Virus record (IMG/VR): IMGVR_UViG_3300017971_000190
Coordinates: 157,680-221,679 of that record
Strand: one strand, 5' to 3'
Length of the DNA: 64,000 bases
Shown here: in pieces, positions 2,183-32,500 of the stretch
Layout of the letters: every line of letters starts with the position of its first letter
Numbering within the stretch: position 1 is the stretch's first letter
Notes under the pieces: generated by a model
Databases searched by the model: none
What the model was told of the DNA's origin: nothing
Seen by the model: only the letters and a program-made list of their open reading frames with translations
Translations under genes and position numbers: made by a program

Positions 2183-3016
2183 TTATCCTCCCATGACGTC
2201 TAGTTCAACTTCAAAAATAACTGTTTCATCTGCTGCGTGTACTTCAGCACTGTAGGGATAGTCACTTTCTTCTGCCCACTCCATGTTTAGACGACGAGGT
2301 GGATCCATATCAAGGTCATAAACAAAATACTCATTCACAAATCGTTTGATTTTAGGTTTAAGTGTTTGCAGTAGTTCTCTACTGTTCACCACAGCAGAAA
2401 GTAATTGGTGTTTTGAAGCATTGCTTAGATAACGGAAAAGCACTCGTCTTTGTTTACCAGCTAAACTAGCCAAACTTTGTCCACTTACTGCGAATCTAAC
2501 AGTAACAAGAGATATGAAGTCATTGTCTTCTGGTTCTTGGCCACTTGCAAATTCTATACCTTTTAGCTCTACATCGGAAGGATTTAAAACAGCAAACCTA
2601 TGGCGTCTCCTTAGCATGCTTGCAGCCTTTGGCCTTTCTACCACTGTTTCTGTGGTATCCTTTTTCAATTTTGTTTCTTGCTCGCCCCACCACTGAACAG
2701 CCAATTGCCACACTTTTTGCTCTAACAGACTTTGAAGAATGCTAAAAAGGTCAAGATAGTTCAACTCCTTAATAGGAGCAGTACCTAGTTTTTCGTTGTA
2801 GAAAAGAAGTTCGATTAATTCATTACCTGTTAGGTCATCTAAAGATGGTTTTGTTTTGAAAGCTGTGTTGGCATCTTTACCACTATCAACTTCTTTTTGC
2901 ACCTTTTTAAGATAATCGTCTACCAGCTTTTTTAAATCCGGACTGGGAGAGAAGGTTTGCGTACCTATTTCTCCTGGTTTAACTACTCTTGTGTATGCTT
3001 TTCTTTTTGGTCTCAT
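2183..3016 (-). CDS. two-module protein with basic leaders (MRPKRKA; internal MLRRRHRFA)
   Basis: 277 aa; internal ATG at 2617 starts an ML-Arg-run leader. Confidence 0.65.
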   Translation of the reverse strand: MRPKRKAYTRVVKPGEIGTQTFSPSPDLKKLVDDYLKKVQKEVDSGKDANTAFKTKPSLDDLTGNELIELLFYNEKLGTAPIKELNYLDLFSILQSLLEQKVWQLAVQWWGEQETKLKKDTTETVVERPKAASMLRRRHRFAVLNPSDVELKGIEFASGQEPEDNDFISLVTVRFAVSGQSLASLAGKQRRVLFRYLSNASKHQLLSAVVNSRELLQTLKPKIKRFVNEYFVYDLDMDPPRRLNMEWAEESDYPYSAEVHAADETVIFEVELDVMGG

Positions 3017-3028
3017 GCTTAATTCCTT

Positions 3029-3265
3029 TTAATAACTAGGAACAATGTGCATATACAACTCTGGAGGAAGCAGGTGTTCTAAATCCATGGGGTTACCTAC
3101 AAAACAAAACTGGCTTACTTCTACCCTTTGTTCTTTACCATTTTTAACTGTACTACCTACCAGGGTTTCAGTATTAAACCAAACAATATTTTCAACCCTC
3201 TCTCCATTTTTATCTAACACACGAAGAGTTTTCTTTAGTCTAATGTTATTGTTATCAATTATCAT
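3029..3265 (-). CDS. hypothetical protein, paralog of 3273..3536
   Basis: Aligns by eye with its neighbour (NGKEQRVEVSQFCFVG...LEHLLP vs NGSERRVQITKFLFLG...LELFLP). Confidence 0.7.
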   Translation of the reverse strand: MIIDNNNIRLKKTLRVLDKNGERVENIVWFNTETLVGSTVKNGKEQRVEVSQFCFVGNPMDLEHLLPPELYMHIVPSY

Positions 3266-3272
3266 AATTAAC

Positions 3273-3536
3273 TTACTCCAAATTTTCCACTCTGTAGTCT
3301 CTCAAACTATCAGGAAGAAACAACTCTAGGCTTTTATCTCCAAGAAAGAGAAATTTGGTAATTTGAACTCTCCGTTCACTTCCATTTTCTTCCATGACGT
3401 AAGCCAACATTTGAAGTGTATCAAAACAAATAAGATAGTCTGTAATAGGTAAACCTTTTTCATTCCACAAACAAAGAGAAGCCAAAAGCTCTGGTGTAAC
3501 TTTACTAATTAACAAAATAGACTCATAGGGTAGCAA
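3273..3536 (-). CDS. hypothetical protein, paralog of 3029..3265
   Basis: See neighbour; short overlap with the upstream gene. Confidence 0.7.
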   Translation of the reverse strand: MLPYESILLISKVTPELLASLCLWNEKGLPITDYLICFDTLQMLAYVMEENGSERRVQITKFLFLGDKSLELFLPDSLRDYRVENLE

Positions 3537-4998
3537 GCATTTTTAAAACTTCTACAGCATCTTCTATTTTTTCGTCCGCTTCTCTAAACATGGTTAAAAG
3601 CTCCTCTAATTGAGGACCCTCAAATTTTTTACTATTGCCGTAGGCCATGCGCAAAAGTACAGGGAGTCTATCTAAAATAGGAGTAAGACCACCAACTATA
3701 CTACGAATGTCATCTTCGACATCTTCATACTCATATCGTACAGCAACTTTTCTTCTACGTCGTCTCAACATTGCTTTTCTCCTGTTCGCTACCAAAGGTT
3801 CGTACTTTTTGTTTTCTTCTACCGCTTGAGCAGCAGCTTCAAAAGCTGGCCCTAAAACTGCATTTTCAATATCTTTAAGATAGTTGTAAATATTTTCTTC
3901 GTTTTCAGATCCGGGCGTTAATTTAAAAAGTATACCAGAAATTTCTCTGGAATAGTCATAATAATCTAAAGAACTAACGTCTCCTGTTCCACTTGTTTCA
4001 GCCCATGTTACAACTTGAGCAATTTCGTAAATCCAATTTTCTACAAGTTGATCAAACTGACTCCAGAGATATTCTCCCGCTTCACTGTCAACAAACCAAT
4101 CTTCATACTGGTTTAATTTGTTTTCTATAAAGGGAGTAATGGCCTCAACTACGGCCTCCTCTACTTGAGGATCGTTGTCGTAAAACTCTGCTCTCCTCTT
4201 AACACTGGCTGCTTTCTGTTCTGCTTGCTCATCTTCTTCAGCACTGTACTGCAAAACTTGGGCGGCAAATTTTTCTAGCTCTTTAAGTACTTTGGAGGTT
4301 GTCTGCTTAGCAGCTGTACCTGCTGTTTTGAATAGCTCTGCTTTTAGTTTACTAGCTTCGTCTGTGGGATCTACTTTTTTAAGCTTCTTTTTACTTTTCT
4401 TGCTTAAACCATGTTCCCAAATAGATTTAGCCAGAGCACCAGTTACCTTACCCAATTTTCTTTCAACGGTAGTTTTCTGACTTCCCCACGTATCAGGATC
4501 TACACTTTCTAGCACACCTTTAAGAGCAGTAAAATAAGCAATACGGTCAATAATATCATAAGCGTGGGTTCTATCTAAAATCTCTTCTGTAGATTCTCCG
4601 GTAGTAACGCTTATCCATTTATCTACAACTTCAACAGCAGCATTGTAGACAAAATCAAAAGAGCCCATGAGGAGTTTGGATCCAGCTTTTACTGCTTGAT
4701 CTACATATTCTTTTTGAGCCCCAGCTTCCTGACCTTTCATGAAGCTTTTTAAAAGGTCTGTTACTGTTTCTCCAAATAGATTTTTCCCTTTGTGCTTTTT
4801 GAATTCTTCTATTTTAGAGGGGTTAATAGCTGCTTGAACAATAAAATAAGCAAGTCTTTTATTTACTAAAGCTTTAAAAGCAGGGGATAATTTTTTAGGA
4901 GAAGCAATTGCAGCTCGGCAAACTTTACCAAGCTCGAAAAAATGAGAGGGATTTTCTAAAAATGGTAAAAAATCCCGAACTGCTATATTGATAGACAT
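3523..4998 (-). CDS. modular putative internal head protein with an SD-equipped internal start at 3771
   Basis: 491 aa; motifs SVKRRA and MLRRRRRKVA; AGGAG lies 7 nt before the internal ATG. Confidence 0.65.
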   Translation of the reverse strand: MSINIAVRDFLPFLENPSHFFELGKVCRAAIASPKKLSPAFKALVNKRLAYFIVQAAINPSKIEEFKKHKGKNLFGETVTDLLKSFMKGQEAGAQKEYVDQAVKAGSKLLMGSFDFVYNAAVEVVDKWISVTTGESTEEILDRTHAYDIIDRIAYFTALKGVLESVDPDTWGSQKTTVERKLGKVTGALAKSIWEHGLSKKSKKKLKKVDPTDEASKLKAELFKTAGTAAKQTTSKVLKELEKFAAQVLQYSAEEDEQAEQKAASVKRRAEFYDNDPQVEEAVVEAITPFIENKLNQYEDWFVDSEAGEYLWSQFDQLVENWIYEIAQVVTWAETSGTGDVSSLDYYDYSREISGILFKLTPGSENEENIYNYLKDIENAVLGPAFEAAAQAVEENKKYEPLVANRRKAMLRRRRRKVAVRYEYEDVEDDIRSIVGGLTPILDRLPVLLRMAYGNSKKFEGPQLEELLTMFREADEKIEDAVEVLKMLATL

Positions 4999-5014
4999 GA
5001 ATCTTTAATCCTTC

Positions 5015-5283: not shown

Positions 5284-7302
5284 CTATTTTCTGCGGTGTT
5301 TACGTGGTCTATGACGCCATTTTTTACCCTCTACACGATCTGCCAAACTAGCACAGAATGCCCCCGGATCTGTAATCTCTGGATCACCTTGTAGTTCTTC
5401 AACACAAGAACTAACGCTACCACCCATACTATTCCAGTAGCTCTCTAAACTATCTTTGTCCCACCCCTCAGGTAAACTTTCCCACTTTCTACCCGTTCTA
5501 TGAGGACGACCACGACCACAACAAGAAGTGCGATGACGATGATGGCTTTGGGAAAACGTAGCTGATACTAAATTCATGTTACTGCAATAAAAAGCTAAAC
5601 GGTTTGCTTCGGTGTCGTTTTTGGGGGCTAAATCATTAAATTCGTCACCGCTTTCATTTTCTGCGTGCCACCCTGAATTGTCTTTGTAAATTAAAACCCA
5701 CATATCTTCTTCAATATTAGACAGTCTACGATCATAAAAATCATAAAGACAAGACAATGGCACATCAAATTCTGAATAATCTGAAAATGAATCAGCTTTT
5801 CTGTGACGTTTTCTAGCAATACGCTTTGCGTAAGCTTCTCGTTCAGCATCATATTCGGAGACGTAGTCTTTGACTACACTCCAAATGGCGTCACTTTCTT
5901 TTTTATTGTAGTGAAGGGTGGTATCACCAAGGTGTTCTACTACTGCTTTGACAATAGTATCAACTTCATGCCCCAGCTCAGCTCCGCGTTCAATTATGCG
6001 AGCTACGTGAGGATCTCTTTTCCAATTAATCATTTGTGAAGCTGTAGATGCATATCTATAGTCAATTTCTTCAAGTGTGGCATCAATATCTTTGAAGTAA
6101 AGAGTAGGGTAATAATGATTCTCATTGGCCCATTCTTTTATGAACTCAATAGCTTCATCCTGGTTATTAAATACACCAATTAATTCGTCATCAATTTCAA
6201 GTTGCACTTCAGAACCAAATTCATCGGTGTAACGAAGAAAAGCATCACCTCTACCAGCAAGTCTACGTCGTCTTCGTCTAAAGTTACCCTTACGGTCTTT
6301 TTTCCTACTAATCATAATTTTGCCCTTTTCGCTTTTAGTTAAAGCAGTTGTTTCCTTTTTGTCGTATTCTTTTCGGTAAACCCTTTTACCGTAAACGTTA
6401 TCCACGTACCAATCTTTAACACCATACTGCTTAGCCCACTTCTTTAACTCAGAGACACTTATAAATTCCAACTCTTTTTTCTGTTTAGCTTTATCTTTTG
6501 GTACATCATCACCGTACTTATCTTTTTTAGCCAATCCACCAGCCACTTCAGCTTTGCTAGGATTACCAGGAACTAATAAGTATTGTTGGCGTCTACGGTG
6601 CCAGTACACTTTCCCGGTTTTAACCTCTTCTGGATCTCCCCACCGCTCCAACTCTTTAATAAGAGGTTTTTCTCCAGAGAACCAATGTATTCCTTTAATT
6701 TCAGTTGCTACTCTACGACGACCCATTGTATTAAAATTCCCTTTATGAGTTTTGAAATTACTACCGGAATTAAAAGGATCTATGCGGTCAATTTCCAAAT
6801 AAATTTCAAAAAGGTCGGGTTCAAGTACGTGACCAGCACTATTTACTAACCATATTTTAGACACTTCAGGATAGTCACCGTCTCTATTTAAAGCTGGTTT
6901 AGGTAAACCATCCCAGTAAACTGTTGCGCTCAATTCTTCTTCTGACAATTCAGTTAACAGGTCTTCAGCATTCCAATCTAAGCCTGTTTGGTCTTCAACT
7001 GTATAAGAAGGATCTATTACTTGTTCCAGCACTTCTCTTAGAGTTGTGGGGTTTGTTTGCGCTTGTTTTAAAATCATGTTTTCAGCTTTCCTGGCTAACT
7101 CTACACAGACACCGTCATTTACACCGTTTTGTTGTCGAATTAAACTGTGAAGCTTATCTAAATCTTCACGATAAGGGTAACGGTACATAAGCTGTTCAAT
7201 GTAAATTTCCGCACCTTGACAATCCACAACAGAATTAGAGTTAGGATACCAGGTTACCCGAGGAGTAAACGGATAAACAGGACCAGTGTAAGCTTTTTTC
7301 AT
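5284..7302 (-). CDS. multi-module putative head protein (at least 3 Arg-run/Ala junctions; C-terminal C..DPGAFC motif)
   Basis: 672 aa; MGRRRVA, FRRRRRRLA, RKRHRKA; the C-terminal SCVEEL..ITDPGAFCASL motif resembles ones I recall from phage head-associated proteins. Confidence 0.6.
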   Translation of the reverse strand: MKKAYTGPVYPFTPRVTWYPNSNSVVDCQGAEIYIEQLMYRYPYREDLDKLHSLIRQQNGVNDGVCVELARKAENMILKQAQTNPTTLREVLEQVIDPSYTVEDQTGLDWNAEDLLTELSEEELSATVYWDGLPKPALNRDGDYPEVSKIWLVNSAGHVLEPDLFEIYLEIDRIDPFNSGSNFKTHKGNFNTMGRRRVATEIKGIHWFSGEKPLIKELERWGDPEEVKTGKVYWHRRRQQYLLVPGNPSKAEVAGGLAKKDKYGDDVPKDKAKQKKELEFISVSELKKWAKQYGVKDWYVDNVYGKRVYRKEYDKKETTALTKSEKGKIMISRKKDRKGNFRRRRRRLAGRGDAFLRYTDEFGSEVQLEIDDELIGVFNNQDEAIEFIKEWANENHYYPTLYFKDIDATLEEIDYRYASTASQMINWKRDPHVARIIERGAELGHEVDTIVKAVVEHLGDTTLHYNKKESDAIWSVVKDYVSEYDAEREAYAKRIARKRHRKADSFSDYSEFDVPLSCLYDFYDRRLSNIEEDMWVLIYKDNSGWHAENESGDEFNDLAPKNDTEANRLAFYCSNMNLVSATFSQSHHRHRTSCCGRGRPHRTGRKWESLPEGWDKDSLESYWNSMGGSVSSCVEELQGDPEITDPGAFCASLADRVEGKKWRHRPRKHRRK

Positions 7303-8185: not shown

Positions 8186-8467
8186 TTACCTTCTAAAACG
8201 TCTGCGTCGTCTAACCGAACCACCCCGTTGTCTAAACCGTTGTTCGTTAATAGCAGTTTTTAATTTTGCAGCAGCATCTTCCAACCACTCTTCTAAGGTC
8301 TCGGCTTCATTATCTGTTAAAAGATCTGGTCTAAGTCGAGCCTGGTATACAAACTCTGCAATGTCTTTTGCGTCTCTTTCAATGAGTTTGGCAAGTTGTC
8401 TAATGTGACGAAAGGCGAATTCTCTATCACTGAGGGCTAAATGTCGTCTTCTGCTTCTTCTTAACAT
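8186..8467 (-). CDS. small protein with ML-Arg leader (MLRRSRRRHLA)
   Basis: Start moved to ATG 8467, which removes the overlap with 8502..10331 and matches the leader family. Confidence 0.65.
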   Translation of the reverse strand: MLRRSRRRHLALSDREFAFRHIRQLAKLIERDAKDIAEFVYQARLRPDLLTDNEAETLEEWLEDAAAKLKTAINEQRFRQRGGSVRRRRRFRR

Positions 8468-8501: not shown

Positions 8502-10331
8502 TTACAGTCCGCGTTTGTACACATCTACACTATTTACTAATTCCCAAATTTTATCTGTTAATTCAAAAATAAAATTGGGTCCGGGATTTTCAATGTCCCC
8601 AGAATTAACACCTTCTTTAACCAAGTTTTTCATAATGGTCATAATATGTAAACTAGCATCCTCTCTAGCATCTAGGTAGCTTCGTGAAGGTTTGTAAGTT
8701 AAATCAGATTTTCTACGTCGTTTACTACTACGAGCAATAGATGGTCTGTGAGGAAAGTAAGACCTTATGAAATCTTGAACATCACTTCCCCCGTATACTA
8801 CGTCGCCTTTTACATCGGTAATGGATTCATCTGATCCTAGTTCACCATACAACCAAGATTCTAATTCTTCATCCTGCATCATTGTAGCAACATCTTTTTC
8901 TATGTTACCTGTTAAATTAACACCGGGAAGGATGTAAAGCGTACCATATTCGTCTTCTGTTACTTCTATTTGTGAAGGGTCAAAAGCGGCTTTTCTACGT
9001 CGTCTTAAACTAGAAGTTCTAATTGTGTCTTTAACCACTGGGTAACCGTATGGTAACTCCTGGTAAAATCTTCTACGTGGGGTTATTTTTTTCAGATACC
9101 TAACTATGCTTTCTTCTCTACGACTACTATAACCGTCTATGGCATAAATATTGTCACCTTTTTTAACAGCAATTACTGTACCACCCAAACCCATACTTTC
9201 TAGTTTTTCGCCGTCTGTCCATAAGGTTCCGACTCTACCACCGTCGTTAGGAACACCTTCAACAAAATCGTTTACCACTCTTTTATCAGCTGGTTTAAGT
9301 GCTGCTGTTCTAACTTTACTTTCCCTGACAACATACTCACTACGACTACTACACATAGTATATAACTCTGCGGCTTCAAGGTCGTTTAGTCTTGGAATAG
9401 TTTTTTGAATATCTCCTGTTGGGTCGTTACCATAATCAGTATTGGCGATCCATTTACCAGCTACGTGGAGCATATCTATAGGAAAGTTTTTAGTTACCCC
9501 AAATTGAGTTGGTTCCATTCGCAGAAAATCAAAGAGGCAAACAGCGCCTACTTCAAATTCAAGAGGAGCTACTCTGTCTGCACGACGTTCCTTGTGTAAT
9601 TTACCAACTGTAGTTCTACGTTTGCGTCCCATGATTTTGTTTCCTTTTCGTTGACTGGTAACTGGCATTTTAGGTGGTCTACCAGTAATGAGTGCTCTGG
9701 TGATGTCTGTTACTCTGTTAGGTCTTCTTACCTTCATGGCTGCTAAAGCGCTTTCTTTAACTAGTTCTTCGTTGTCGTAGGGATCAGCTGGGAAAGGGTG
9801 AGGTACGTCACCCTCTAATTGTGCCACCCAACTGGAGGCTTCGTCATCCCAGTAAACGGAAATAACATCGTCGTCCATGGAAAAACCTTTTTTGTCTTGT
9901 GGTCCGTACCTCAGCATGACGGTAGGAATTAACTCGTCTAGAGGTAACTCTTCACTGATAAGGTAATAGTCTTCGTGAGGGTAGTCTTCTTTTAATTTCT
10001 TAGTTAGTTTATTTCTGGCTTCTTCAACGCAACTTACAAAAGCGCTACCAAAAACACCGCGTTCACCACCAGAAAGACGATTATACTGTTCATCTAACCA
10101 ACGGTCTGGAGCAGAGAGAAAATCAGGTTCTTCTCCACTAATTATAGAGCGTATGAGATGCATCCCGTTCGCCAGCCCATGCATGTAGGGGTTGACGTTC
10201 CAAGTACCGGGGCTACACTGAATGGCGAGTAAATCGTCAATGCTGTCTAACAAGGCTTTGGTTTCGTAGGTAGTAGGTGGTTCTACTTTAACATGTGGAC
10301 GAGAAATAAAGTTGAAATCACCCCACGGCAT
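8502..10331 (-). CDS. multi-module putative internal head protein
   Basis: 609 aa; junctions MGRKRR..ERRA, SKVRTAA, SLRRRRKAA, KRRRKS; N-terminal PGTWNVNPYMHGLANG domain. Confidence 0.6.
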   Translation of the reverse strand: MPWGDFNFISRPHVKVEPPTTYETKALLDSIDDLLAIQCSPGTWNVNPYMHGLANGMHLIRSIISGEEPDFLSAPDRWLDEQYNRLSGGERGVFGSAFVSCVEEARNKLTKKLKEDYPHEDYYLISEELPLDELIPTVMLRYGPQDKKGFSMDDDVISVYWDDEASSWVAQLEGDVPHPFPADPYDNEELVKESALAAMKVRRPNRVTDITRALITGRPPKMPVTSQRKGNKIMGRKRRTTVGKLHKERRADRVAPLEFEVGAVCLFDFLRMEPTQFGVTKNFPIDMLHVAGKWIANTDYGNDPTGDIQKTIPRLNDLEAAELYTMCSSRSEYVVRESKVRTAALKPADKRVVNDFVEGVPNDGGRVGTLWTDGEKLESMGLGGTVIAVKKGDNIYAIDGYSSRREESIVRYLKKITPRRRFYQELPYGYPVVKDTIRTSSLRRRRKAAFDPSQIEVTEDEYGTLYILPGVNLTGNIEKDVATMMQDEELESWLYGELGSDESITDVKGDVVYGGSDVQDFIRSYFPHRPSIARSSKRRRKSDLTYKPSRSYLDAREDASLHIMTIMKNLVKEGVNSGDIENPGPNFIFELTDKIWELVNSVDVYKRGL

Positions 10332-10333: not shown

Positions 10334-10603
10334 TTAGTCTCCGTAAACACCCACCAAACGATACTCGGTTATGGTTACTAAATTACCGTGATAAAGAAGA
10401 TCGTTTTTCCTACCTGTTGGTTCTGCCTCTAAGCCGTAGCCTTGATTTTCACCAAAATAATTTTCATCAAACCAGATCACACTTTGAAGCTCTCTTGCAA
10501 CACTGTAAGGGTCTTCCAATTCATCTTCTTTAACCCAAAAGGTTGTTCCTTCAGATAAACGAGCTTTTGTAGCTGCTACTCTACGGCGTCTTCGTTTTAG
10601 CAT
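10334..10603 (-). CDS. small acidic protein with leader MLKRRRRRVAA
   Basis: AGGAG SD; 89 aa. Confidence 0.75.
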   Translation of the reverse strand: MLKRRRRRVAATKARLSEGTTFWVKEDELEDPYSVARELQSVIWFDENYFGENQGYGLEAEPTGRKNDLLYHGNLVTITEYRLVGVYGD

Positions 10604-10630
10604 TGCTAAATTCTCCTAAAAAGTCGGTTC

Positions 10631-10984
10631 TTATGGCATATCTAAGTACGCCCAACCTTTACTATCAAGTTCGTCTTCTATTTCTTTTTGTGAAAGGATT
10701 AACCCTTCTCTGCTTCCAACATCACGTAGTAGTTGTTTTAAATCCGTTATTGGTTGTTCTCCAGACCACTTAACCTTAAAGTTTTCTTCATCGCCTAAAT
10801 CTGTATGACTAAAAATTGCCGCTATGCCAATAGCATCGTCAATTGCTTCTTGTAGTTGTCTTGAGTTTATCGCTACTATTTCAAATACGTAAGGTTTAGA
10901 TTTATCTTTCGAGGTAAATACTTCTAAATAAGTGTAAACATATGTATATTCAGCAGCCATTCTGCGTCGTCTTCGTCTTAACAT
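10631..10984 (-). CDS. small acidic protein with leader MLRRRRRRMAA
   Basis: AAGGAG SD; 117 aa. Confidence 0.75.
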   Translation of the reverse strand: MLRRRRRRMAAEYTYVYTYLEVFTSKDKSKPYVFEIVAINSRQLQEAIDDAIGIAAIFSHTDLGDEENFKVKWSGEQPITDLKQLLRDVGSREGLILSQKEIEDELDSKGWAYLDMP

Positions 10985-11000
10985 GGCACTGTCTCCTTTG

Positions 11001-11324
11001 TTATTTGTAATAACGATTCCAATAGGTTGTATTATATAGATTAGTGGTAAGCATTGAAACTAAAATATTGCGTAGAGGAGATTTGGCAGACCGTTTTTCT
11101 GGCCAAATGACAGGAATACCAGAAAGAGTCAGTTCTTCTACAATTTGAAACAATTCTTCCATATCAAGTCTGTAAAAAAAATCATCTAGTTGGGTATGAC
11201 TAAGATCCACATGATGATCTGTAAATTCAGTGAACACTTCTAAAAGAGTAGGAGAAGCTTTCAAAATAACATCCGATGCTGCTCCTCTAAAACAGGTATT
11301 TTTGTGTAATCTTCGCCTTAACAT
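11001..11324 (-). CDS. small protein with leader MLRRRLHK..RGAA
   Basis: Start moved to ATG 11324 (AAGGAGG SD). Confidence 0.7.
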   Translation of the reverse strand: MLRRRLHKNTCFRGAASDVILKASPTLLEVFTEFTDHHVDLSHTQLDDFFYRLDMEELFQIVEELTLSGIPVIWPEKRSAKSPLRNILVSMLTTNLYNTTYWNRYYK

Positions 11325-11338
11325 GATTTTACCTCCTT

Positions 11339-11557
11339 TTATCCCTGAGAACACCAAACAGAACCGTTACCGTCTTCATCAGCGTCCATCCAAACCTCAC
11401 CAAAGGCTTCACTGGCTTCAGTTAGCTGTGTGGCTTGAGGTTCAGACCAGTCACCAGCTTCATCTAAAAATTCATCAAACAGGTAACGAAGTTGTGCACT
11501 AGCTTCAAAGGGAGAAACAGCAGCTAATCGTCTTCTACGTCTATGTCGTCTTAGCAT
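11339..11557 (-). CDS. small acidic protein with leader MLRRHRRRRRLAA
   Basis: Start moved to ATG 11557 (AAGGA SD). Confidence 0.7.
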   Translation of the reverse strand: MLRRHRRRRRLAAVSPFEASAQLRYLFDEFLDEAGDWSEPQATQLTEASEAFGEVWMDADEDGNGSVWCSQG

Positions 11558-11598: not shown

Positions 11599-13203
11599 TT
11601 AACAAGCTACACCCCCTTCACCAGAAGAGTGTCCATAAAGATCCATTTCAAAAGCCTCACTAGCTTCGTACATTTGTCGGTCTAATGGATCTGGCCAATC
11701 ACCATCCATGAAGCCAGCTCCCGTACCTTGGGCGGTCATAGCAAAATCGTGACCTGCATCAGCAGGACTTCCGGCTTCCATAATTGCATCACCAAAATGA
11801 ATCCAAAATTCGGCGCAGTTTTCTTCCATCTGGCTATAACAATCATTATCAATATCATTGGAACCGAAAACAGAATCCATTGGAACACCTTCATCATCGC
11901 CATAAGCAGTACTAACAAATAACAAACCTTCTACGTAAGCATCAAAGAATTCTTTAAAAGCAGCATCTTGTTCTTTACCACGCAAGGAACTAGGTTTCGG
12001 TTTATATCGACCATGCTGCGCTATAATGGCTTTAGTATTGCGGAGCAGTTTTTCGATACGATTTAATTCTTCATCGGATGTATCGTCTTCTAACCCTTGT
12101 GTGTACCTTACTAACCATCTTTCCAAAGTCGATTCTAAAGCATTCAATTCGTCAATAGAAGCTTTAGTTCGTCCAAGATCTTGTGGCCGGTGCGATACTA
12201 ATCTAGAACCAAGAGCATAAACTGGATCGCTCTGTCCACTATGGAACCACAAAATAACTTCGGGATCTAATTGAGTAGAAGTGACAGGAATAAAATAATC
12301 AGAACCTAAATCACCAGCTTTTCGTTTTCGGTCAAAAGGGCGACGGGTACCTTTCCTTTCTTTTTTGGCAACTGGAAAATATCGTTTAGCCCACTTTTCC
12401 AAATCAGCAGCAGAAACTTCTTGAACCACAGCGTAGTCTTTGGTCAGTTTCTTAGCCAAAACTACTTGAGCTTTTTGCATGTAACGGAAAGCAGCCTGAG
12501 CTGTTTTAATACCTTTTCTCCTCAGCTTGCTCACACCACCTGTGACTTTAACCAGATCTTTAATTTCCAATTCGGCTTCTTTAGCCACTTCACCCTTCTT
12601 AAGCCTTACTGGTTTTTTGCTTTTCCAGCGACGAGGACCCTTTTTAAATCCTGCTTCCCCTTCTCCCATAAGGTCTTCAAAACCAACTTCCCCCTCACCT
12701 TCAGCAGGAGCAGCTTCCTCACCTTCAGCAGGTGCTTCCTCCTCTGGTTCAGCTACCGGCTCCTCTTCTACCTCTTCCACTTCTTCTACACCAAAGAGTT
12801 CGTCATCACTTTCAGAAGAATCTTCTTCTGTGCTTTGAATAAATTCAGCAGCAGCACTGCTAGCTAAATCTTCTAAAGAATCACTTATTTCTCCCATACC
12901 CTCTTTCATGACAGACTGAACAACCTCTTTAATGAACTCACCAAAGTGTTTGGCTGCCTCTTCCTTACCTCTTCTTCCTAACTCGTCACCAATTTCTTCA
13001 GTGAGATCGTCAATAGCGGTTTGGAAAATCTCTTTTAGACCGTCTTTAATGGTGAGCACACTATTGCTGTACAACTTAGTACCAGCAGCGTTGAATAGTG
13101 AAGTCAAATCTGGCCCCATGCGGCGTTCCAATTTGCTACTTACGCTACCAGGTTGGGTGCTATCAGCTGCTTTTCTCAAAGTGGTTTTGGTTTTTCGTGC
13201 CAT
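11599..13203 (-). CDS. multi-module putative internal head protein
   Basis: 534 aa; LRKAA, IKTA and RKRKA junctions; Glu-rich linker; C-terminal AGHDFAMTAQGTGAGFMDGDW motif. Confidence 0.6.
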   Translation of the reverse strand: MARKTKTTLRKAADSTQPGSVSSKLERRMGPDLTSLFNAAGTKLYSNSVLTIKDGLKEIFQTAIDDLTEEIGDELGRRGKEEAAKHFGEFIKEVVQSVMKEGMGEISDSLEDLASSAAAEFIQSTEEDSSESDDELFGVEEVEEVEEEPVAEPEEEAPAEGEEAAPAEGEGEVGFEDLMGEGEAGFKKGPRRWKSKKPVRLKKGEVAKEAELEIKDLVKVTGGVSKLRRKGIKTAQAAFRYMQKAQVVLAKKLTKDYAVVQEVSAADLEKWAKRYFPVAKKERKGTRRPFDRKRKAGDLGSDYFIPVTSTQLDPEVILWFHSGQSDPVYALGSRLVSHRPQDLGRTKASIDELNALESTLERWLVRYTQGLEDDTSDEELNRIEKLLRNTKAIIAQHGRYKPKPSSLRGKEQDAAFKEFFDAYVEGLLFVSTAYGDDEGVPMDSVFGSNDIDNDCYSQMEENCAEFWIHFGDAIMEAGSPADAGHDFAMTAQGTGAGFMDGDWPDPLDRQMYEASEAFEMDLYGHSSGEGGVAC

Positions 13204-13233: not shown

Positions 13234-16200
13234 TTAGCTTCTACGGCGACGAGCAAAAACGCCTACGCCGGGAATTTTCAGTTTTGCAGGGGGAATTGTT
13301 TTAGTTTCGTAGCGATTTAAACGAGCTTTACGATTTGAAGCGCTGTAACTGTGCTCAACAGGTTCCACCTCGTCTAAACGCACACCTTGCACTATCTCAT
13401 TGGTTTCTGGATTAAAAAGAACAAGTAAAATACCTTCAGGAGCACCACTTTCAGCATCGGCATCATAATACTGCCAAATATCACCATCATAGTAAAATTG
13501 TTTTCCAACTTCAATACCAGCAATATCTCTTCCATAAGATTTATAGAGGTGTATGTCTTCTTTAACTCTAGCTACATCCTGATCATTTAAAACATGACGA
13601 AGGTAAGGAGCTGCTTTTCTTTTTCTCACCGAAGCAAACCTACCTTCTTCAAACTGTTTCACTAATTTTCTCAGTTCCCCAGTTAAAATAGCGGTAGTTT
13701 CGTGTTTGTCTCCACGACCAATAATACGCGGTTTAACGTTCCAAATAAATTGTTCCAACTCTGGTCCTGGATTACGTTTTAAATCAACACCAATGATCAT
13801 ATCAAAACCACGAGGAAGACGGTTGTTAAATGCTTCTCCGTAAACAACGTCGTCCATGGCTTCTAAAAAATAAGCCCAGCCACGTTTGTACTCTGTATTG
13901 TAGTGGTTTAAAATCTTCTCGGCTAAGTCATAGTAGTAATCAGCCTGTTTAATTCTAGTCTTACCTGTGGTGGGAGGCAATTTGTAGAGAGGTTTAGATT
14001 TTAGGCCAAACTCGGGATCAATATCAATGCGTTTACTGGCAAAGGTGTCTGATGCTATAGCTTCAGCTACCTCAAAAGTGGGAAGATTATCCCAAGCATT
14101 GCCATTATAAGTTTCGGTAAACATTTCGCTACCTGCTTCTTCTCCATGCTCTTCTACCAATTCATCATAGTGTTCTCTATAATGCTCAAAATTCCACATT
14201 TCTAAAGTTTCAAAAGCTTGCTGAATACAACTTTCAGCACTTTCATAACTGTCCACTACTACAGCTGCAGCGGGATTAAATCCGCTACCATCGTGAACAA
14301 TGGCTACGTTGACAGTTTCAGAATCGGGATCAAGATAACCTTCTCCGTCTACCACTGAAACCCCTTTTAACATGGACTTAAATTGTTCTAGATCACCCCT
14401 AGCTGTACGTTTTCTAGTTTTAGCCGTTGCAGCAAAAACTCCCGGAAAAAGCCTTCTAGCACGGTCGTTATCCATTACACTAATGTGCCAGGAACCATGG
14501 TCTGGAAGACGCGACGTACTCCACGGTGCGTTCTTTTCATGACTAAGAGCGTCTTCAGCCCAAACACTGACAGTAGGCCCTTGAAGAAAAACAGCGTAGT
14601 CGCCACGAGTGGTCACTTTACCAGGAAATTGGCTGAAAATGCGTTTCAAAAGGGGGATGGGATCTCGTCCGTCATCCCAGGCAAAATCTACACGGTAAGT
14701 ACCGTACTGAGGACCGTCAAAATAAGCCCTTACAGGTTGAGGACCACTGAGGTGACTAACACCTCTAAAATCAAAATCGTTGAGATCAGCTGCAATTTGA
14801 TCAGCTGTGGTTCTAATTTCTTCCAGGTTAGCTTGGCGTTTACGGTATCTCATTGATTTACCCTTTGTCAAGAGTGGGTTTTTAGACCCCACACTCATTG
14901 TGTCTTCGAGGAAGATGGTTACCCAATTTTTAAATAAATCTAGTTCAGAATATCTTTCGTTTTCTAGTTTATCATTGCGTAGGCTACTATCTTTGGGATC
15001 CCAAAACCAACCTGTACCATCATTAAGAAGATACCCTTCTACAGCCGTTCCTACGTTGACAGCAATTTTGTTTGAATCAACTTGCTGAAACTTAACAGTT
15101 GGATATTCTATTTCTTGGAAACGTTTTACCAATTCCTTAGTCATTTCGTCTCTTGGTTTAATAGGAACAATATCAGTCTTAACTCCGCTTTCTCTAGCAG
15201 CGTCGTAGACAGCAGAGTCAAAGTGGGAGAGTTCTTCCTCACTTAAAAATTCTCCATCACTACGTTCAATAAGTGCAGTGGTAATAAACATTTTAGAAGA
15301 GCTGCTATCAAATAATACTAAAGAATCGTCAACAACTTGAGTTTCATATGGCTTACTCCAACCGACGTTAGGCTCAGTGACTAGAGGCATGGAAGCTATG
15401 GCAAAGTCAACAGCAGCTGGAAAAGAGGAAAAAGTCTGCTTGTCTTTTTGCCCCTCTTGCTCAACTCTGTATTTGTCTTCAGACCATTGGGTATAAGTAA
15501 CAGTTACGGTGTAAGTAGGCTCATAGTCACTTTTCCTAATTTTCATGTTGCCCAACCTTTTGTAATCTGAGGGCTCAAAAACCCGTTCTCCGGTTTTGTC
15601 CGGAAGTAAACTAGAGTACCACTCTGGCTCTAGTTTGTACATGCGACCCTTACTGGTTTTTAAATTTCTAGCAATTGGTACACTGCGTACAATAGGATTG
15701 GTAGTAATAAAGTATTCTAATTTAATAGGAGTTTTTCTACTAAATGAAGTATATTCCATGCGACCGTTAAAACGGTCTAAATCTTCTTGAGCACCATAAG
15801 AGCGACAAACTAAAATCCAAGTACCATCTTTAATAATGACATTTACTGCTTTATTTAATGGTTTACCCGCATCCATGGTTTGTTTGCCAATGTCTTCACT
15901 AAGGGGTACATCTAAACCAAGACCGCGAAGTCTTTTTACTTCAGAACGGAAGTGGGCACCATGTTGATCTCGTTCCCACCTATCTTCTCCACTTTGCATG
16001 AACTTAACGTGTATTAATTCATGCCCTAAAATGCCAAGAAATGTCTCTCTGTCTAAATCGTAACGGTTGCTAATTTCCAGGCTCGTAACTTTGGTTTCTC
16101 CAGTGTTACGATTACGTCTTCCTTTTACTAAACCGTACTGGCGGTAGAACCGACCGTACTTGAAATGGAAACTTAAACTGAGTTCACCATTAAAGTACTT

Positions 16201-29117: not shown

Positions 29118-29126
29118 GAAAATCCC

Positions 29127-29498
29127 TTAGAACATGTGACTAGGCAGCTTCATACCAAGTGCGTGAGCTGCTTTGAAAATGTTGTTACGCATGAGGGAGA
29201 GACCCCACCGATCGCCATTTTCAATTACAGATCTCATGCGATTAAATGCTTCTAGTTCATTTCTGGTTAACTCGAATTTATTGTAGAAGTACTCATAAAC
29301 TTTATTTAACAATTCAACAGACTGTTCATCTTTATCTAAAACATCAACAGTATCCACATACGCAGTTACATCTACAAGGGCTTCGATAGCACTTTCAGCT
29401 CTTCGTTGCCTAGCAGCTAAACGTGAGCGACGAATACGTTTACGTCGCCTCCAGGAAGAATTATTTTTTGCCAATCTTGGTCGTCTGCGTTTTAACAT
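29127..29498 (-). CDS. small protein with leader MLKRRRPRLA
   Basis: Start moved to ATG 29498 (AAGGAG SD). Confidence 0.65.
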   Translation of the reverse strand: MLKRRRPRLAKNNSSWRRRKRIRRSRLAARQRRAESAIEALVDVTAYVDTVDVLDKDEQSVELLNKVYEYFYNKFELTRNELEAFNRMRSVIENGDRWGLSLMRNNIFKAAHALGMKLPSHMF

Positions 29499-29508
29499 GA
29501 GTATCTCC

Positions 29509-32500
29509 TTAAAGTTCTTCGCCTTCGTAACCATGAAGGTAATTTCTTAGTTCATACATATCTTCTTCATCTGCAAAGAAAACAAGAGCTAGCCTACCTG
29601 TGTCTTCATCCAAAGTAATTTCGTAACTTCCAGCTGGGAGTTCGCTGTAACCACTGTTCATAGGCATAACAATATAACGGGTAAGGGCACTTTGTAAATC
29701 TTCTTCACTGGCTTCAGAACCCAACTTTTTACGTAAATCGTAGTGTTTGACTACAGTCCAAAACTCTTCATCACTAGCGTTGGCAGGTAAAATTTCGTCT
29801 ACCTCAAATTCCATAGAGTCAGCTTCGCCTTCATAGGCGTCACTGTAATTGAGGTGGTTAAGTACGTGGCCATCGAAAACAGCTACGTCGTCTTGGAGAT
29901 CGTAACGAGCCATAATCTTCCTCCGTTTGAAAGAGGCTTCCATTTCCCACGGAATAGGTTTAACAGGCTTCTTTTTACGACGACGTTTTCTTTGTTTTAG
30001 AGCTTTATCTGTAACAGGCCACAACGTTTTCTTCTCTAAAGCCAACTCAAAAATATCAGCAATAATTTTGTCGTGAAGATACCATTTATCATTTTTATCA
30101 TAACCTTCTTCCAAACGCTCTTTAGCAAGTCTATTAGACGTATCCTTATTTCGTCTAAGGTCATTAAAATCTCTATGTGCTGCTAACCAAGCAGCTCTTT
30201 CATCTATTTGCTGTTCGGTTAAATCAACAGGCATAATATCGCCATGAGGCATATGAGGTTTATCGTACCAATCAACTGGTCTCTCATTGTCAATTATACG
30301 TGCTTTTTTTCGGAAAGTAGATCCTCTTCTTCCCTTACCAAAAGTATTTACCAAACCTTGACAATCTGCATCAGGAGGACAGTAAAATACCATGACTAGT
30401 CTATTAGCGTCGTCTACAGTAAACTGGTAACGACCACCAAACTCAGCTAGTTCACTGTTGCCTTGATTAAGGGGTGTAGCAATATTGTAGTTTAAGCTGT
30501 TCACGACGAACATGCGAAGTTCTTGAAGGTCTCCGCTACTTCTTAAACTATCGGGAAGTGAGAGTCCCTCTTTCTCGGCCATAATCTCCCACTCATCCCA
30601 AGGGGCATCCCAACTAATAAGCGTATCAAGTACGCAATCGAGATGATCAATAGTAGATTTCCTAGCTTGCTCTCTAAGACACTGTTTGACCATGTCATCA
30701 TAATGGTGAGGTCTAAGGGGCATTGCTTGTCTACGTCGTCCACTACGCCTAACTCTACCTTCTCTACTATGTTCTTTTCTAAACGCCTCAACAGCAAATT
30801 CTAAAGCCTGACCAGCAACCTTGTCACTAAGATCAAAAAGCTGTTCATGCAGTGTAAAGTCACTGGACATGAGAGCTAAAATTTCTTCTCCCTCAATGTC
30901 CATGGCACAAAGTTCATCCCAAGTACCTTCACATTCCCACGTACCAATACCACTACCAGCTTCTTCCCAAACAGCGTAGAGAATACCATCATCTTCATCC
31001 ATAAGGAGATCATAAGCTTCTTCTTTTTGGTCCGGTGTTAAACTGGTGTTGGAAGCCAGATATTTTTTAACAGCTGCTTTCCATTTCTGCACCCAAGCAT
31101 TTTTAAATTGTTCTGTTTCCGCCCAAAGTTCATCGTGTAAATACTCAAAAGCGTGATTTACATAATCACCCCAATCTTGATAAAAAGTGTCTAACATTAC
31201 TTCAAGTTGAGCATCACTTAAAGACTCAACTTGTTTGGGGTAAGTCTCTCTGGCAAATTTTACACCTTCACTGCCTTCCAGTTCTTGACCTTCACTTTCA
31301 ACAACAGTGCTTTCAATTTCTTGCATGAGCCCTTCCATAAGGGTTCTAGCATGATGATAGTAAAGAGCTATTTTACGACGCATTCTTGCTTTCCCTTCCA
31401 ACCTTAATTGTTGTTGACGAGGGTCAACACCTTCGGTGTATTCTTTAACTAGATGCCAAATTGGATGGGAAGGATCAAGGTAATCGTCACCCCAATTTTC
31501 CGCCATTTCCCGGACTATATCTTCGGTAGAGAGGTATTTATCTCTAGATAATTTTTGTATGTTTTTTCTAATATCTTCTTCAGTACCGTGAAAAATAGAA
31601 CCAAATTCTTCTTCAGCCTTTTCTTCTTCCATTTCTTTAATTTTATTTTGCACAGCGTGTTGCGCTAAACTACGTGATGCTTTCATATCTTCTTGAATGC
31701 TTTTCCATTCTTCTTCACCAGCACTAGCAGTCACGTTTTTAATTTCTGGCCAGAGTAAACTTTCTACTTCACCTTTTAACTGACTTTCGTTTACATCTTC
31801 ATGCCAGAGAGAATCTACAATGTCATTCTGATAAGTATCAAAATCACCCCACTCAGAAACTCCACCAATGGCGTCAAAGAAAGCTTGGTCAGCAGCATAA
31901 TCTCCCATATTTTCTATGGCTTGTCTAACTTTGCCTTCTGCTAAACTCCACGGATCTTCCTCATTTCCCACTTTAGAGATTAATTGTGCCAACGTATTTT
32001 CAATCCAATCTTCAACAGTACTTTTAACATCATCTAAGAAGTAGTCAGGACTAGGAGCGCTGTCATAAATGGCACTGCTGTAAACTTCTTTAAGAACGTC
32101 TAGCATGAGTTTAGGGTCATCACTAGCAGGAAGTTCTTCAAGTTCTACTAAACGTAGGAAGTCATCTTTATCTAGAACCTCCATCTCATCAGCATACAGC
32201 TGATGATAAATAGAATTCTGATAATCTTCACCCCAGTAACCCGCTGTTCTCTTAAAAGCAGCCACCAAGGATTTAGCAAAAGCTTGTTTCATTTGAAACA
32301 TTTCGGCACTGACTTTTTTACCTTCCAAATCCCAACTAGCAAGAGCTTTAGTTTCTGGACCACCGTGCTCAATACCTGCCTCAGTGATATAAGCTTTAGC
32401 TGGTACAGGAAGTTCAAACTCATCGAAGTCTTTGCTACTGGCTGGGCGCAAACCAAATTTAGCTAGTTCATCAGCAGTTACATGAGTTTTAGTCGGAATA

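What the first reader, a model, noticed from the sequence alone, without database searches (positions are those of the whole stretch)
2183..31383. Large 'polyproteins' look like fused genes that keep an internal SD plus ATG at module junctions
Seen: internal Met codons at Arg-motif junctions have SD-like sequences 6-10 nt upstream. Examples are 3771 (AGGAG-N7-ATG, MLRRRRRKVA), 6726 (AAGGG, MGRRRVA), 9632 (AAGGA, MGRKRR), 14853 (AAGGG, MRYRKRQA), 19022 (AAGGA, MSLRKRR) and 31383 (AAGGG, MRRKIA). In protein terms this gives a recurring (K/E)G-x2-4-M signature, the same context as the true starts at 11324 and 11557. Inference: adjacent tagged genes fused by stop-codon loss. Cleavage at the tag would make such fusions neutral, and both long and short isoforms may be made.
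Basis: partly seen in the sequence, partly recalled or inferred. Interest (0 to 1): 0.72.

Follow-up and report, generated by a model that had tools for sequence, protein, structure and literature searches.

The report
Shuffled phage head polyproteins with internal starts
The long head-region genes of this uncultured marine jumbo phage are mosaics of gene-like modules that close relatives encode fused, split or rearranged, and several module boundaries keep a ribosome-binding site and start codon that probably still work as internal starts.

Summary
All six cited ATGs, and both true starts, lie on the minus strand with the quoted SD-like strings. In the head block 8 of 13 internal ATGs followed by an Arg run have an SD core. 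The figure is 9% for 889 other internal ATGs and about 20% for Arg runs without Met.

The fusion idea is partly right. Three near relatives (R, S, L002/L004) encode the same modules in different fused or split states:
- the 672-aa ORF is 385 + 251 aa in S;
- the 1140-aa ORF is ≥580 + 220 aa in S;
- the 1030-aa ORF is 334 + 684 aa in R;
- the 534-aa ORF stops at its junction in S.

However, no difference is a simple stop-to-sense change. All are module insertions, deletions or rearrangements, and their breakpoints are enriched at Arg linkers.

The cited junctions behave differently from one another:
- 19022, 14853, 9632 and 31383 keep SD + ATG in relatives, and 14853 does so with three different upstream partners.
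- 2617 and 3771 lack the Met in R.
- 6726 is a clean 33-nt indel.

Best reading: these are cassette-built head cargo polyproteins with some conserved in-frame internal starts, as in lambda C/Nu3. Initiation and cleavage at the Arg motif remain untested.

The parts
29509..32931 (-). 1140-aa composite ORF (likely start at 32901). Modules are roughly aa 11-210, 226-443, 511-716 and 987-1139.
   Evidence: An exhaustive HMMER search found each module as stand-alone 150-320 aa proteins and also inside unrelated large proteins. Relative R has a 1030-aa form and relative S has >=580 + 220 aa.
31381..31407 (-). Junction 31383: GAA GGG AAA GCA AGA ATG, then MRRKIA.
   Evidence: R has GAGGGTAAA ATG and S has GGAGGGTTCC ATG. 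P0122 starts at the equivalent Met.
29911..29937 (-).
   Evidence: The SD is built from two rare Arg codons (synonymous resampling p=0.01; the same codons in R give p=0.016). The downstream module is a separate gene (P0094) in S.
17532..19370 (-). 612-aa scaffold-like protein: N-terminal tag MSRKRKIRKR, an N domain, six Arg runs, a long acidic tract, and a conserved helical C domain.
   Evidence: It lies directly upstream of the head maturation protease.
19020..19046 (-). Junction 19022: AAA GGA AAA AGA ACC ATG, then MSLRKRR. This is the best candidate for a working in-frame internal start.
   Evidence: The site is identical in R. L002 has CAA GGA ...N9 ATG and L004 has GAA GGA ...N9 ATG at 39-45% protein identity. 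More distant homologs have AAGGAG-N9-ATG at about the same place, or lack the N domain altogether.
16570..17421 (-). Head maturation protease.
   Evidence: phrog_18299 E=2e-38. There are 89 homologs, the nearest at 88% identity.
13234..16326 (-). 1030-aa composite ORF (gene call: 1012 aa from 16272). It has a SprT-like HExxH domain at its N terminus.
   Evidence: Pfam SprT-like E=6e-5, below the cut-off. R encodes it as 334 + 684 aa with the modules reordered. S joins its second half to a module of the 491-aa ORF.
14851..14877 (-). Junction 14853: AAG GGT AAA TCA ATG, then MRYRKRQA.
   Evidence: R has GAA GGA AAA AGA ACA GCC ATG and S has AGA AAA GGA ACT ACC ATC ATG. The three genomes have three unrelated upstream modules, and the Arg run is present only in the window.
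11599..13203 (-). 534-aa ORF made of a scaffold-like core (aa 1-281) and a C-terminal module. The junction ERKGT-RRPFDRKRKAG at about 12310-12360 has an SD-like string but no ATG.
   Evidence: S stops at ...VAKKQ*, exactly at this junction. R has both the core and the C module plus an extra N-terminal module. L002 and L004 proteins of about 300 aa end at the same place.
10334..11557 (-). Four small genes with N-terminal ML(R/K)RRRR-x-A tags. Their true starts are 11557, 11324, 10984 and 10603.
8502..10331 (-). 609-aa composite ORF.
   Evidence: S has 447 aa and lacks two window modules (about aa 250-337 and 449-545). R has 790 aa with other inserted modules, one of them homologous to aa 493-593 of the window's 672-aa ORF. 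L002 and L004 have 130- and 63-aa genes matching only the N-terminal part.
9630..9656 (-). Junction 9632: AAA GGA AAC AAA ATC ATG, then MGRKRR.
   Evidence: The Met is kept in R (TAGGGAGAACCAAAATC ATG) and in S (GGGAGAGTTAGAAAA ATG). In both the SD-like string sits in another codon frame, so the K-G peptide is not kept.
5284..7302 (-). 672-aa composite ORF.
   Evidence: S encodes it as 385 + 251 aa. The second gene has AAAGGAAAG-N6-ATG and starts MIRRRRRRW. R has 489 aa and lacks aa 1-83 and 503-586.
6724..6756 (-). Junction 6726: the 33 nt AAA GGG AAT TTT AAT ACA ATG GGT CGT CGT AGA (KGNFNTMGRRR).
   Evidence: This stretch is absent as a clean 11-codon indel in R. S has RKGSK-V(GTG)-KQRKTA at the same place, with a different upstream module.
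6313..6339 (-). Junction 6315: GAA AAG GGC AAA ATT ATG, then MISRKKDRKGNFRRRRRR.
   Evidence: In R the Met lies 8 residues upstream, with AAGGAA.
3523..4998 (-). 491-aa ORF. Junction 3771 is AAC AGG AGA AAA GCA ATG, then MLRRRRRKVA.
   Evidence: The SD depends on Arg codon choice (p=0.035). R has no Met here and has two Arg runs instead. In S the upstream module (aa 314-398) is joined to a module of the 1030-aa ORF.
2183..3016 (-). 277-aa ORF with junction 2617 (AAG GCT GCA AGC ATG, then MLRRRHRFAV).
   Evidence: R has GF-RRFA with no Met.
580..1464 (-). 294-aa ORF with an extra module (aa 24-98) bounded by two Arg runs.
   Evidence: R has 215 aa with a single Arg run.

Best explanation
The window is the head-assembly block of an uncultured marine jumbo phage. 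Its long ORFs are mosaics of short modules separated by basic linkers of the form (hydrophobic)-R/K(3-6)-x-A.

Shown here:
- Modules are gained, lost, reordered, fused and split between phages whose protease is 57-88% identical.
- The breakpoints are enriched at the Arg linkers.
- A subset of boundaries carries an SD-like string plus ATG, like those in front of the small tagged genes.

Inferred: a module behaves as a cassette of SD, ATG, Arg tag and body. It can sit as its own gene or in frame inside a longer ORF.

Inferred: at junctions where SD + ATG survive across diverged relatives or across different upstream partners (19022, 14853, 9632, 31383, 29913), the internal site still starts translation. 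That would give a shorter product beside the long one, as with lambda C/Nu3. At junctions that the nearest relative lacks (2617, 3771, 6726), the signal is a lineage-specific relic or a recent acquisition.

Inferred, not tested: the Arg-x-A linker is the site where the adjacent head protease cuts, or a capsid-targeting tag that pairs with the acidic tracts of the two scaffold-like proteins. If so, fused and split arrangements would give similar mature products.
For: - The sites are verified and enriched, and the enrichment is reproduced in relative R.
- Fused and split states differ between relatives: 672 = 385 + 251; 1140 = >=580 + 220; 1030 = 334 + 684; 534 against 360 and 627; 609 against 447 and 790; 294 against 215.
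- Modules of the 1140-aa ORF occur as stand-alone proteins in other phages, and one of them starts at the Met equivalent to 31383.
- 19022: NAA GGA N9 ATG is kept with K, Q or E before Gly and no conservation of the three spacer residues. Distant homologs lack the N domain.
- 14853: SD + ATG is kept with three different upstream modules.
- 9632: the SD-like string is kept in another codon frame in relatives.
- 29913: GGAGG is made from the rare codons CGG AGG in both the window and R (p=0.01 and 0.016).
- Predicted accessibility at the junctions (0.53 unpaired) resembles true starts (0.54) and exceeds other internal ATGs (0.46).
- 9 of 25 homology breakpoints lie within 12 aa of an Arg run, against 9% expected (p=0.0004).
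Against: - No translation or protein data exist for this uncultured phage.
- At six junctions the SD-likeness is fully fixed by the K/E-G peptide.
- The accessibility difference is not significant (p=0.087, n=8).
- Three of the cited Mets are absent in the nearest relative. 6726 is a 33-nt indel inside a conserved protein, and its spacer resembles the preceding residues (SNFKTH / GNFNTM). It may therefore have arisen locally and not from an intergenic region.
- 16 of 25 breakpoints are not at strict Arg runs, and three of the 25 are contig ends and not true breakpoints.
- The host anti-SD sequence is unknown.
- Ribosomes elongating from upstream would partly mask internal sites.
Confidence: 0.68

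Rival explanations
1. Neutral relics only. The SD + ATG strings are leftovers of translation-start regions from genes that were fused. They no longer start translation and persist only because too little time has passed.
For: 2617, 3771 and 6726 lack the Met in relative R. The Met positions at 6315 and 31383 shift between relatives. The junction in the 534-aa ORF keeps an SD-like string but has lost any ATG.
Against: 19022 is kept as NAAGGA-N9-ATG in L002 and L004 at 39-45% identity, while the surrounding residues are not conserved. 14853 is kept in three genomes with three different upstream partners. The rare-codon GGAGG at 29913 is kept in R.
Confidence: 0.22
2. Peptide-level motif. (K/E)-G-x2-4-M is part of the recognition site of the protease or of the packaging machinery, and its resemblance to an SD is a by-product.
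For: Six of eight internal sites read the GG as an in-frame Gly codon, against 24% of 85 true starts. For these sites the SD-likeness follows from the peptide alone.
Against: N-terminal tags have no upstream residues at all, and stop codons lie 4-7 codons before several of them. At 19022 the residue before Gly is K, Q or E in three relatives. At 9632 relatives have G-R in another frame and no K-G. Arg linkers without Met mostly lack K-G.
Confidence: 0.05
3. Composition or chance. Purine-rich Lys/Arg/Glu/Gly coding sequence gives SD-like strings near any Met.
For: Acidic tracts in homologs of the scaffold-like protein show many SD-like strings before Met codons.
Against: Arg runs without Met have a core in only about 20% of cases, against 62-71% with Met. 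Background internal ATGs have 9%. The nearest relative reproduces the pattern.
Confidence: 0.03
4. Pause signals. Internal SD-like strings slow ribosomes at module boundaries to help each module fold, and the Met is incidental.
For: The strings lie at module boundaries.
Against: It does not explain why the Met is enriched and conserved, nor why the spacing to the ATG is that of true starts. Whether SD-like strings cause pausing at all is disputed in the field (own knowledge).
Confidence: 0.02

Closest known systems
Lambda genes C and Nu3: an in-frame nested gene in the head-assembly operon (own knowledge; C-Nu3 interaction context in PMC3224144)
   Same: A head-assembly ORF contains an in-frame internal SD + ATG, so a shorter scaffold-type product shares its C terminus with the longer one. 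The genes lie next to the portal and protease. Site 19022 lies in a scaffold-like protein directly upstream of the protease.
   Different: Here there are many such sites in many ORFs. Both the long and the short form would begin with an Arg tag. No product has been observed. The proteins show no sequence relation to C or Nu3.
Head and ejection proteins of T4 and the giant phages phiKZ, 201phi2-1 and SPN3US, which are processed by the prohead protease and carry capsid-targeting propeptides (PMC10052503, PMC5694885)
   Same: A block of many head-associated proteins lies near a prohead protease. A short recurring motif sits at N termini and at several places inside long regions. Propeptides there are cut at multiple sites.
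   Different: The known motifs end in Glu (T4 L/I-x-E; SPN3US A/S/G-x-E). This one is a run of Arg/Lys followed by x-Ala. Modules here look like independent cargo units and not one mature protein plus a propeptide. Cleavage is not shown here.
Polyvalent proteins of phages and conjugative elements (Iyer et al. 2017, PMC5512222)
   Same: These are large multi-module proteins in a late or virion gene context with highly variable architectures between relatives. They often carry a zincin-like peptidase thought to release the parts. The 1030-aa ORF begins with a SprT-like HExxH domain.
   Different: No recognisable effector enzyme domains were found in the modules. The SprT-like match is below Pfam's threshold. 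The boundaries here carry a defined basic linker and, in part, their own SD + ATG, which is not a described feature of polyvalent proteins.
Gene fusion and fission ('Rosetta stone') events
   Same: The same modules are encoded as one ORF in one genome and as adjacent genes in another.
   Different: Turnover is very fast, with six of about ten larger proteins differing between phages at 88% protease identity. It proceeds by cassette indels and rearrangements and not by stop-codon mutation.

Membership tests
In-frame nested gene with internal initiation (lambda C/Nu3 type) | In-frame ATG inside a longer ORF with an SD at working distance | tested here: met
   The distance from GG to ATG is 9-15 nt at the junctions, against 8-17 nt at true starts.
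In-frame nested gene with internal initiation (lambda C/Nu3 type) | SD + ATG conserved beyond the surrounding sequence in relatives | tested here: met
   Met for 19022, 14853, 9632 and 29913. Not met for 2617, 3771 and 6726.
In-frame nested gene with internal initiation (lambda C/Nu3 type) | A second protein product starting at the internal ATG | not testable with these tools
   The phage is uncultured. Only DNA runs hold the sequence.
Gene fusion by stop-codon loss | Modules encoded by separate adjacent genes in relatives | tested here: met
   672 = 385 + 251; 1140 = >=580 + 220; 1030 = 334 + 684.
Gene fusion by stop-codon loss | The split point coincides with the cited SD + ATG junctions | tested here: not met
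   None of the six cited junctions is split in R or S. The split point does coincide at 29913 (not cited), and at 31383 only in distant homologs.
Gene fusion by stop-codon loss | Collinear DNA differing only by stop against sense codon | tested here: not met
   Every fused/split difference comes with non-homologous flanking modules or indels. The one in-frame single-stop junction examined (1030|534) keeps its stop in both the window and S.
Prohead-protease-processed head proteins with targeting propeptides (T4 / phiKZ / SPN3US type) | A prohead protease gene in the same block | tested here: met
   phrog_18299 E=2e-38.
Prohead-protease-processed head proteins with targeting propeptides (T4 / phiKZ / SPN3US type) | The family's cleavage motif (x-x-Glu) | tested here: not met
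   The recurring motif is R/K(3-6)-x-A.
Prohead-protease-processed head proteins with targeting propeptides (T4 / phiKZ / SPN3US type) | Demonstrated cleavage and presence in the virion | not testable with these tools
   No proteome exists for this phage.
Polyvalent proteins (Iyer et al. 2017) | Several unrelated modules in one polypeptide, with variable architecture, in a virion gene context | tested here: met
Polyvalent proteins (Iyer et al. 2017) | Zincin-like metallopeptidase domain | tested here: inconclusive
   SprT-like scores 23.2 bits against a cut-off of 25.6 (E=6e-5), with HELIH present, and only in the 1030-aa ORF.
Polyvalent proteins (Iyer et al. 2017) | Known effector enzyme domains (ART, nucleases, methylases and the like) | tested here: not met
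   No Pfam or PHROG function was found for the other modules.

The most novel reading that the evidence does not exclude
The head block works as a cassette system. Each cargo module carries its own ribosome-binding site, start codon and Arg-x-Ala tag, where the tag serves both as a capsid-targeting signal and as a protease site. Any fused, split or reordered arrangement would then yield the same mature, packaged products. That would free the phage to shuffle, gain and lose cargo modules by in-frame recombination at the tags, much like exon shuffling, and to set module dosage by internal initiation.
Probability: 0.35. Interest if true: 0.78.

Novelty: new variant of a known kind. Interest (0 to 1): 0.62.

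Why it matters
If this reading holds, it shows how a large phage can keep a rapidly changing set of packaged proteins. Gene boundaries become almost irrelevant, because the processing tag and, in part, the translation start travel with each module.

It also gives annotators a concrete rule for this clade. Long ORFs near the protease should be read as strings of Arg-x-Ala-delimited modules with possible internal starts.

It points to a prohead protease or targeting specificity (a basic run followed by x-Ala) unlike the Glu-based motifs of T4 and the phiKZ-like phages.

Finally, the conserved internal start at 19022 is a clean, testable case of nested-gene expression in a scaffold-like protein of an uncultured phage lineage.

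Tried and rejected
- Megablast of 10 kb against GenBank phages found no match. tblastn with the terminase found only distant jumbo phages such as PaBG and phiRSL1, at under 30% identity.
- The search for related loci with the single 609-aa protein found nothing.
- An all-against-all 'Rosetta stone' screen over 80 IMG/VR loci around protease homologs gave only the terminase interrupted in L069 and a few unrelated splits. The cargo proteins are too diverged at 50% protease identity or below.
- Synonymous-codon resampling at the K/E-G junctions was uninformative, because the peptide fixes the string.
- The predicted mRNA accessibility trend goes the right way but is not significant.
- I considered 'stop inside TAAGGA mutated to AAAGGA' as the reason for the K/E-G frame bias. 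I could not support it, because AAAGGA is simply the common SD context here and no relative shows the stop.
- My first hand count of breakpoints at Arg linkers (about 14 of 18) was too generous. The scripted count is 9 of 25.
- PHROG scan of eight proteins in the 20 kb of the record just before window position 1, downstream on the coding (minus) strand, gave no function, and the major capsid protein was not identified.
- The genome search could not open the record behind L088.
- One protein search timed out and was repeated with a shorter query.
- Read laying was not used. The two runs that hold the stretch carry it as identical contigs, so no variant information was expected.
- No structure or complex prediction was run. 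There is no deep alignment for the modules, and no binding claim rests on one.

Full report
**What the window is.** The window is the last 64 kb of a 221.7-kb IMG/VR virus record estimated to be 63% complete. All genes in 1-47 kb lie on the minus strand. PHROG profiles identify a large terminase (23454-25784), a portal (20606-22924) and a head maturation protease (16570-17421). The terminase is under 30% identical to those of jumbo phages such as PaBG and phiRSL1. The same DNA is held by marine sediment and seawater metagenome runs, and an identical contig exists in another sample. The finding therefore concerns the head-assembly block of an uncultured marine jumbo phage.

**Check of the observation.** On the minus strand every cited coordinate is an in-frame ATG with the quoted upstream string and downstream Arg-rich peptide. 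The two true starts, 11324 and 11557, have the same context, and an independent gene call on the identical contig uses those two starts.

I scored every in-frame internal ATG of the whole record for pairing with a generic anti-SD. Of 889 ordinary internal ATGs, 9.1% have an SD core 4-13 nt upstream. In the head block 8 of 13 ATGs followed by an Arg run do (2617, 3771, 6315, 6726, 9632, 14853, 19022, 31383). The Mann-Whitney test on energies gives p=0.001.

Basic, purine-rich coding sequence is not the cause. Strong internal Arg runs without a nearby Met have a core in only 4 of 18 cases, and one of those four is the 31383 site itself. Arg runs with a Met have a core in 5 of 7 cases. The nearest relative reproduces the excess: 3 of 5 against 7.6% of 185, Fisher p=0.005.

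Two limits apply:
- At the six sites that read K/E-G, the SD-likeness follows entirely from the peptide. Synonymous resampling gives p=0.3-0.7, so codon choice cannot tell RNA from peptide there. Only 3771 (p=0.035) and 2617 (p=0.056) depend on codon choice.
- Predicted unpaired probability around the junctions (0.53) equals that of true starts (0.54) and exceeds other internal ATGs (0.46). With eight sites this is not significant (p=0.087).

**The Arg motif.** Strong Arg runs are concentrated in the head block, at record positions 137-190 kb. They begin many small proteins, for example MLKRRRRRVAA, MLRRRRRRMAA and MLRRHRRRRRLAA. They also recur inside the long ORFs, often without any Met, for example SVRRRKKVA, NFRRRRRRLAG and SSLRRRRKAAF. 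The common form is a hydrophobic residue, three to six Arg/Lys, one variable residue, then Ala.

Several proteins also end in an Arg run. The two scaffold-like proteins (612 aa and 534 aa) carry long acidic tracts, and the 612-aa one has six Arg runs in a row.

**Ordinary junctions look like the internal ones.** Between real genes of this block the pattern is stop, 0-6 nt, AAGGA(G), 6-9 nt, ATG. Examples are TAAGGAGATACTC-ATG and TAAAAGGAGGTAAAATC-ATG. Five of 24 neighbouring pairs are in frame with only one or two stops between them. Reading such a junction through would give exactly the K/E/R-G/E-x2-4-M signature.

Six of the eight internal sites read the GG as an in-frame Gly codon, against 24% of 85 true starts. 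I could not explain this bias firmly.

**Relatives.** Homologs of the protease are plentiful. Contigs at 57-60% protease identity (L002, L004) show a run of small genes after the protease, many starting with M-x-RRRR-x-A. Their roughly 300-aa proteins match only aa 14-278 of the window's 534-aa ORF and end there. Their 130-aa and 63-aa genes match only the N-terminal part of the 609-aa ORF. Eighty IMG/VR loci at 50% identity or less were too diverged for the cargo proteins.

Two much closer phages then turned up:
- R is an 87.7-kb scaffold with 88% protease identity (L088, L092, L093).
- S is three fragments from a sister sample (L086, L091, L095).

**Fused and split states differ in almost every large gene.**

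| Window | R | S |
|---|---|---|
| 86-aa gene + 1030-aa ORF | 334 aa (SprT-like module + the 86-aa homolog) + 684 aa, starting MKRRVA, with two inner modules in the opposite order | second half of the 1030-aa ORF joined to a module of the window's 491-aa ORF |
| 534 aa | 627 aa (extra N-terminal module) | 360 aa (N-terminal module + core, ending ...VAKKQ*) |
| 609 aa | 790 aa | 447 aa |
| 672 aa | 489 aa | 385 + 251 aa |
| 1140 aa | 1030 aa | >=580 + 220 aa |
| 294 aa | 215 aa | not recovered |

Further details on these rows:
- 534-aa ORF: where S stops, the window reads on through ERKGT-RRPFDRKRKAG. The Met that starts the window's gene at 13203 is internal in S, with GGAG-N9-ATG.
- 609-aa ORF: the window has modules that S lacks. 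R has others, one of them homologous to aa 493-593 of the window's 672-aa ORF.
- 672-aa ORF: the second gene in S has AAAGGAAAG-N6-ATG and starts MIRRRRRRW.
- 294-aa ORF: the window's extra module is bounded by two Arg runs, where R has one.

An exhaustive profile-free HMMER search with the 1140-aa ORF shows the same thing at larger distance. Its four modules occur as stand-alone 150-320-aa proteins and inside unrelated large proteins.

I took breakpoints objectively from BLAST segment ends. Nine of 25 lie within 12 residues of a strict Arg run, against 9% expected (p=0.0004). Three of the 25 are contig ends and not true breakpoints.

No difference between relatives is a stop-to-sense change in collinear DNA. 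The one in-frame, single-stop junction I could compare (1030|534) keeps its stop in both the window and S.

**The cited junctions one by one.**
- *19022.* The site is identical in R. L002 has CAA GGA N9 ATG and L004 has GAA GGA N9 ATG at 39-45% protein identity. So AAGGA and ATG are kept while the residue before Gly is K, Q or E and the three spacer residues are free. More distant homologs have AAGGAG-N9-ATG at about the same place, or lack the N-terminal domain altogether. This looks like a maintained internal start in a scaffold-like gene.
- *14853.* K/E-G-x2-4-M with an SD-like string is kept in the window, R and S, although all three have unrelated sequence upstream and only the window has the Arg run.
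- *9632.* The Met is kept in R and S. The SD-like string (TAGGGAGA, GGGAGA) lies in another codon frame, so the K-G peptide is not kept. Codon-choice p values are 0.027 and 0.07.
- *31383.* The site is fused in R and S, with GAGG or GGAGG 4-5 nt before a shifted Met. The distant homolog P0122 starts at this Met and P0111 starts ten residues before it.
- *3771 and 2617.* R has no Met at either site.
- *6726.* The whole 33-nt stretch KGNFNTMGRRR is missing from R as a clean indel between conserved flanks. S has RKGSK-V(GTG)-KQRKTA there, with a different upstream module. The linker is therefore probably old and was deleted in R. However, its spacer also resembles the preceding residues, so a local origin cannot be excluded.

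An uncited site, 29913, is the clearest fusion case. GGAGG-N7-ATG is built from the rare Arg codons CGG AGG in both the window and R (p=0.01 and 0.016). The module behind it is a separate gene in S, starting within two residues of the window's Met.

**Interpretation.** The proposed mechanism does not. The genomes differ by cassette-level insertion, deletion, translocation and partner exchange, preferentially at the Arg linkers, and not by loss of a stop codon.

The junction signals are of two kinds. Some are conserved across divergence or across different partners. That is hard to explain without function, and they most likely still start translation, as lambda Nu3 does inside gene C (own knowledge). 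Others are lineage-specific and may be relics or recent arrivals.

It is inferred, not tested, that the Arg-x-Ala linker is cut by the neighbouring protease, or that it targets modules into the procapsid by pairing with the acidic scaffold tracts. That inference rests on the linker's position, its recurrence, the small residue after the basic run, and analogy with T4 and the giant phages, whose proteases cut many head proteins at short motifs and cut propeptides at multiple sites (PMC10052503).

**Comparison with known systems and novelty.** Four kinds of system are known:
- nested in-frame starts in head-assembly genes;
- protease-processed head and ejection proteins with targeting propeptides;
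- polyvalent multi-domain phage proteins with fluid architectures (PMC5512222);
- gene fusion and fission.

This case combines them in a form I did not find described. It has a basic-run-x-Ala linker in place of the Glu-based motifs. Module boundaries partly carry their own start signals. Architectural turnover between close relatives is very fast. I rate it a new variant of a known kind. The strongest single testable item is the conserved internal start at 19022.

Noticed in passing
window 13234-13263, 5284-5320, 8186-8215, 16277-16300: Several head-block proteins end in an Arg run just before the stop (...FARRRRS*, ...RHRPRKHRRK*, ...VRRRRRFRR*, ...PLPRKKF*). Relatives R and S do the same. 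The basic motif is therefore not only an N-terminal or internal feature.
   Followed up: partly
window 17532-19370 and 11599-13203: Both scaffold-like proteins carry long Glu/Asp tracts. They could be the electrostatic partners of the Arg tags. The 612-aa protein has six Arg runs about 18 residues apart, just before its acidic tract.
   Followed up: no
window 13204-13236; L086 1610-1645: The stop of the 1030-aa ORF is in frame with the start of the 534-aa ORF, with a single TAA between them. The whole 30-nt spacer (TAA GAA AxA AAA GTC AGA AAG GAy ...ATC ATG) is conserved in relative S.
   Followed up: partly
window 16277-16537 versus L093 4595-5599: The 86-aa gene lies upstream of the SprT-like module as a separate gene in the window. 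In relative R it is fused downstream of that module. Two inner modules of the 1030-aa ORF are also in the opposite order in R.
   Followed up: partly
window 48392-48964: A 190-aa protein has four tandem copies of KKRRGRPPKKKAADDAP, which are AT-hook-like RGRP repeats.
   Followed up: no
window 34645-35568 and 33159-34019: A patatin-like phospholipase (Pfam E=2.5e-18) and a weak nucleotidyltransferase-like protein lie just upstream of the 1140-aa ORF. The phospholipase is conserved in relative R.
   Followed up: no
window 27305-28336: A 343-aa protein has a signal-peptide-like N terminus and is very rich in Cys, Lys and Arg. It is conserved in R and S (343 and 350 aa).
   Followed up: no
L095 493-1404: Relative S has an HNH/NUMOD4 homing-endonuclease-like gene inserted between the homologs of the window's 186-aa and 98-aa genes. 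The window and R lack it.
   Followed up: no
L069 1450-4953: In one distant relative the large terminase is encoded in two pieces separated by about 1 kb, which suggests an intron or an inserted element.
   Followed up: no
window 5284-5500; L019 7497-9836: The C-terminal module of the 672-aa ORF (…DPGAFCASL…) occurs in relatives inside quite different proteins. In L019 it sits inside the homolog of the scaffold-like protein.
   Followed up: partly
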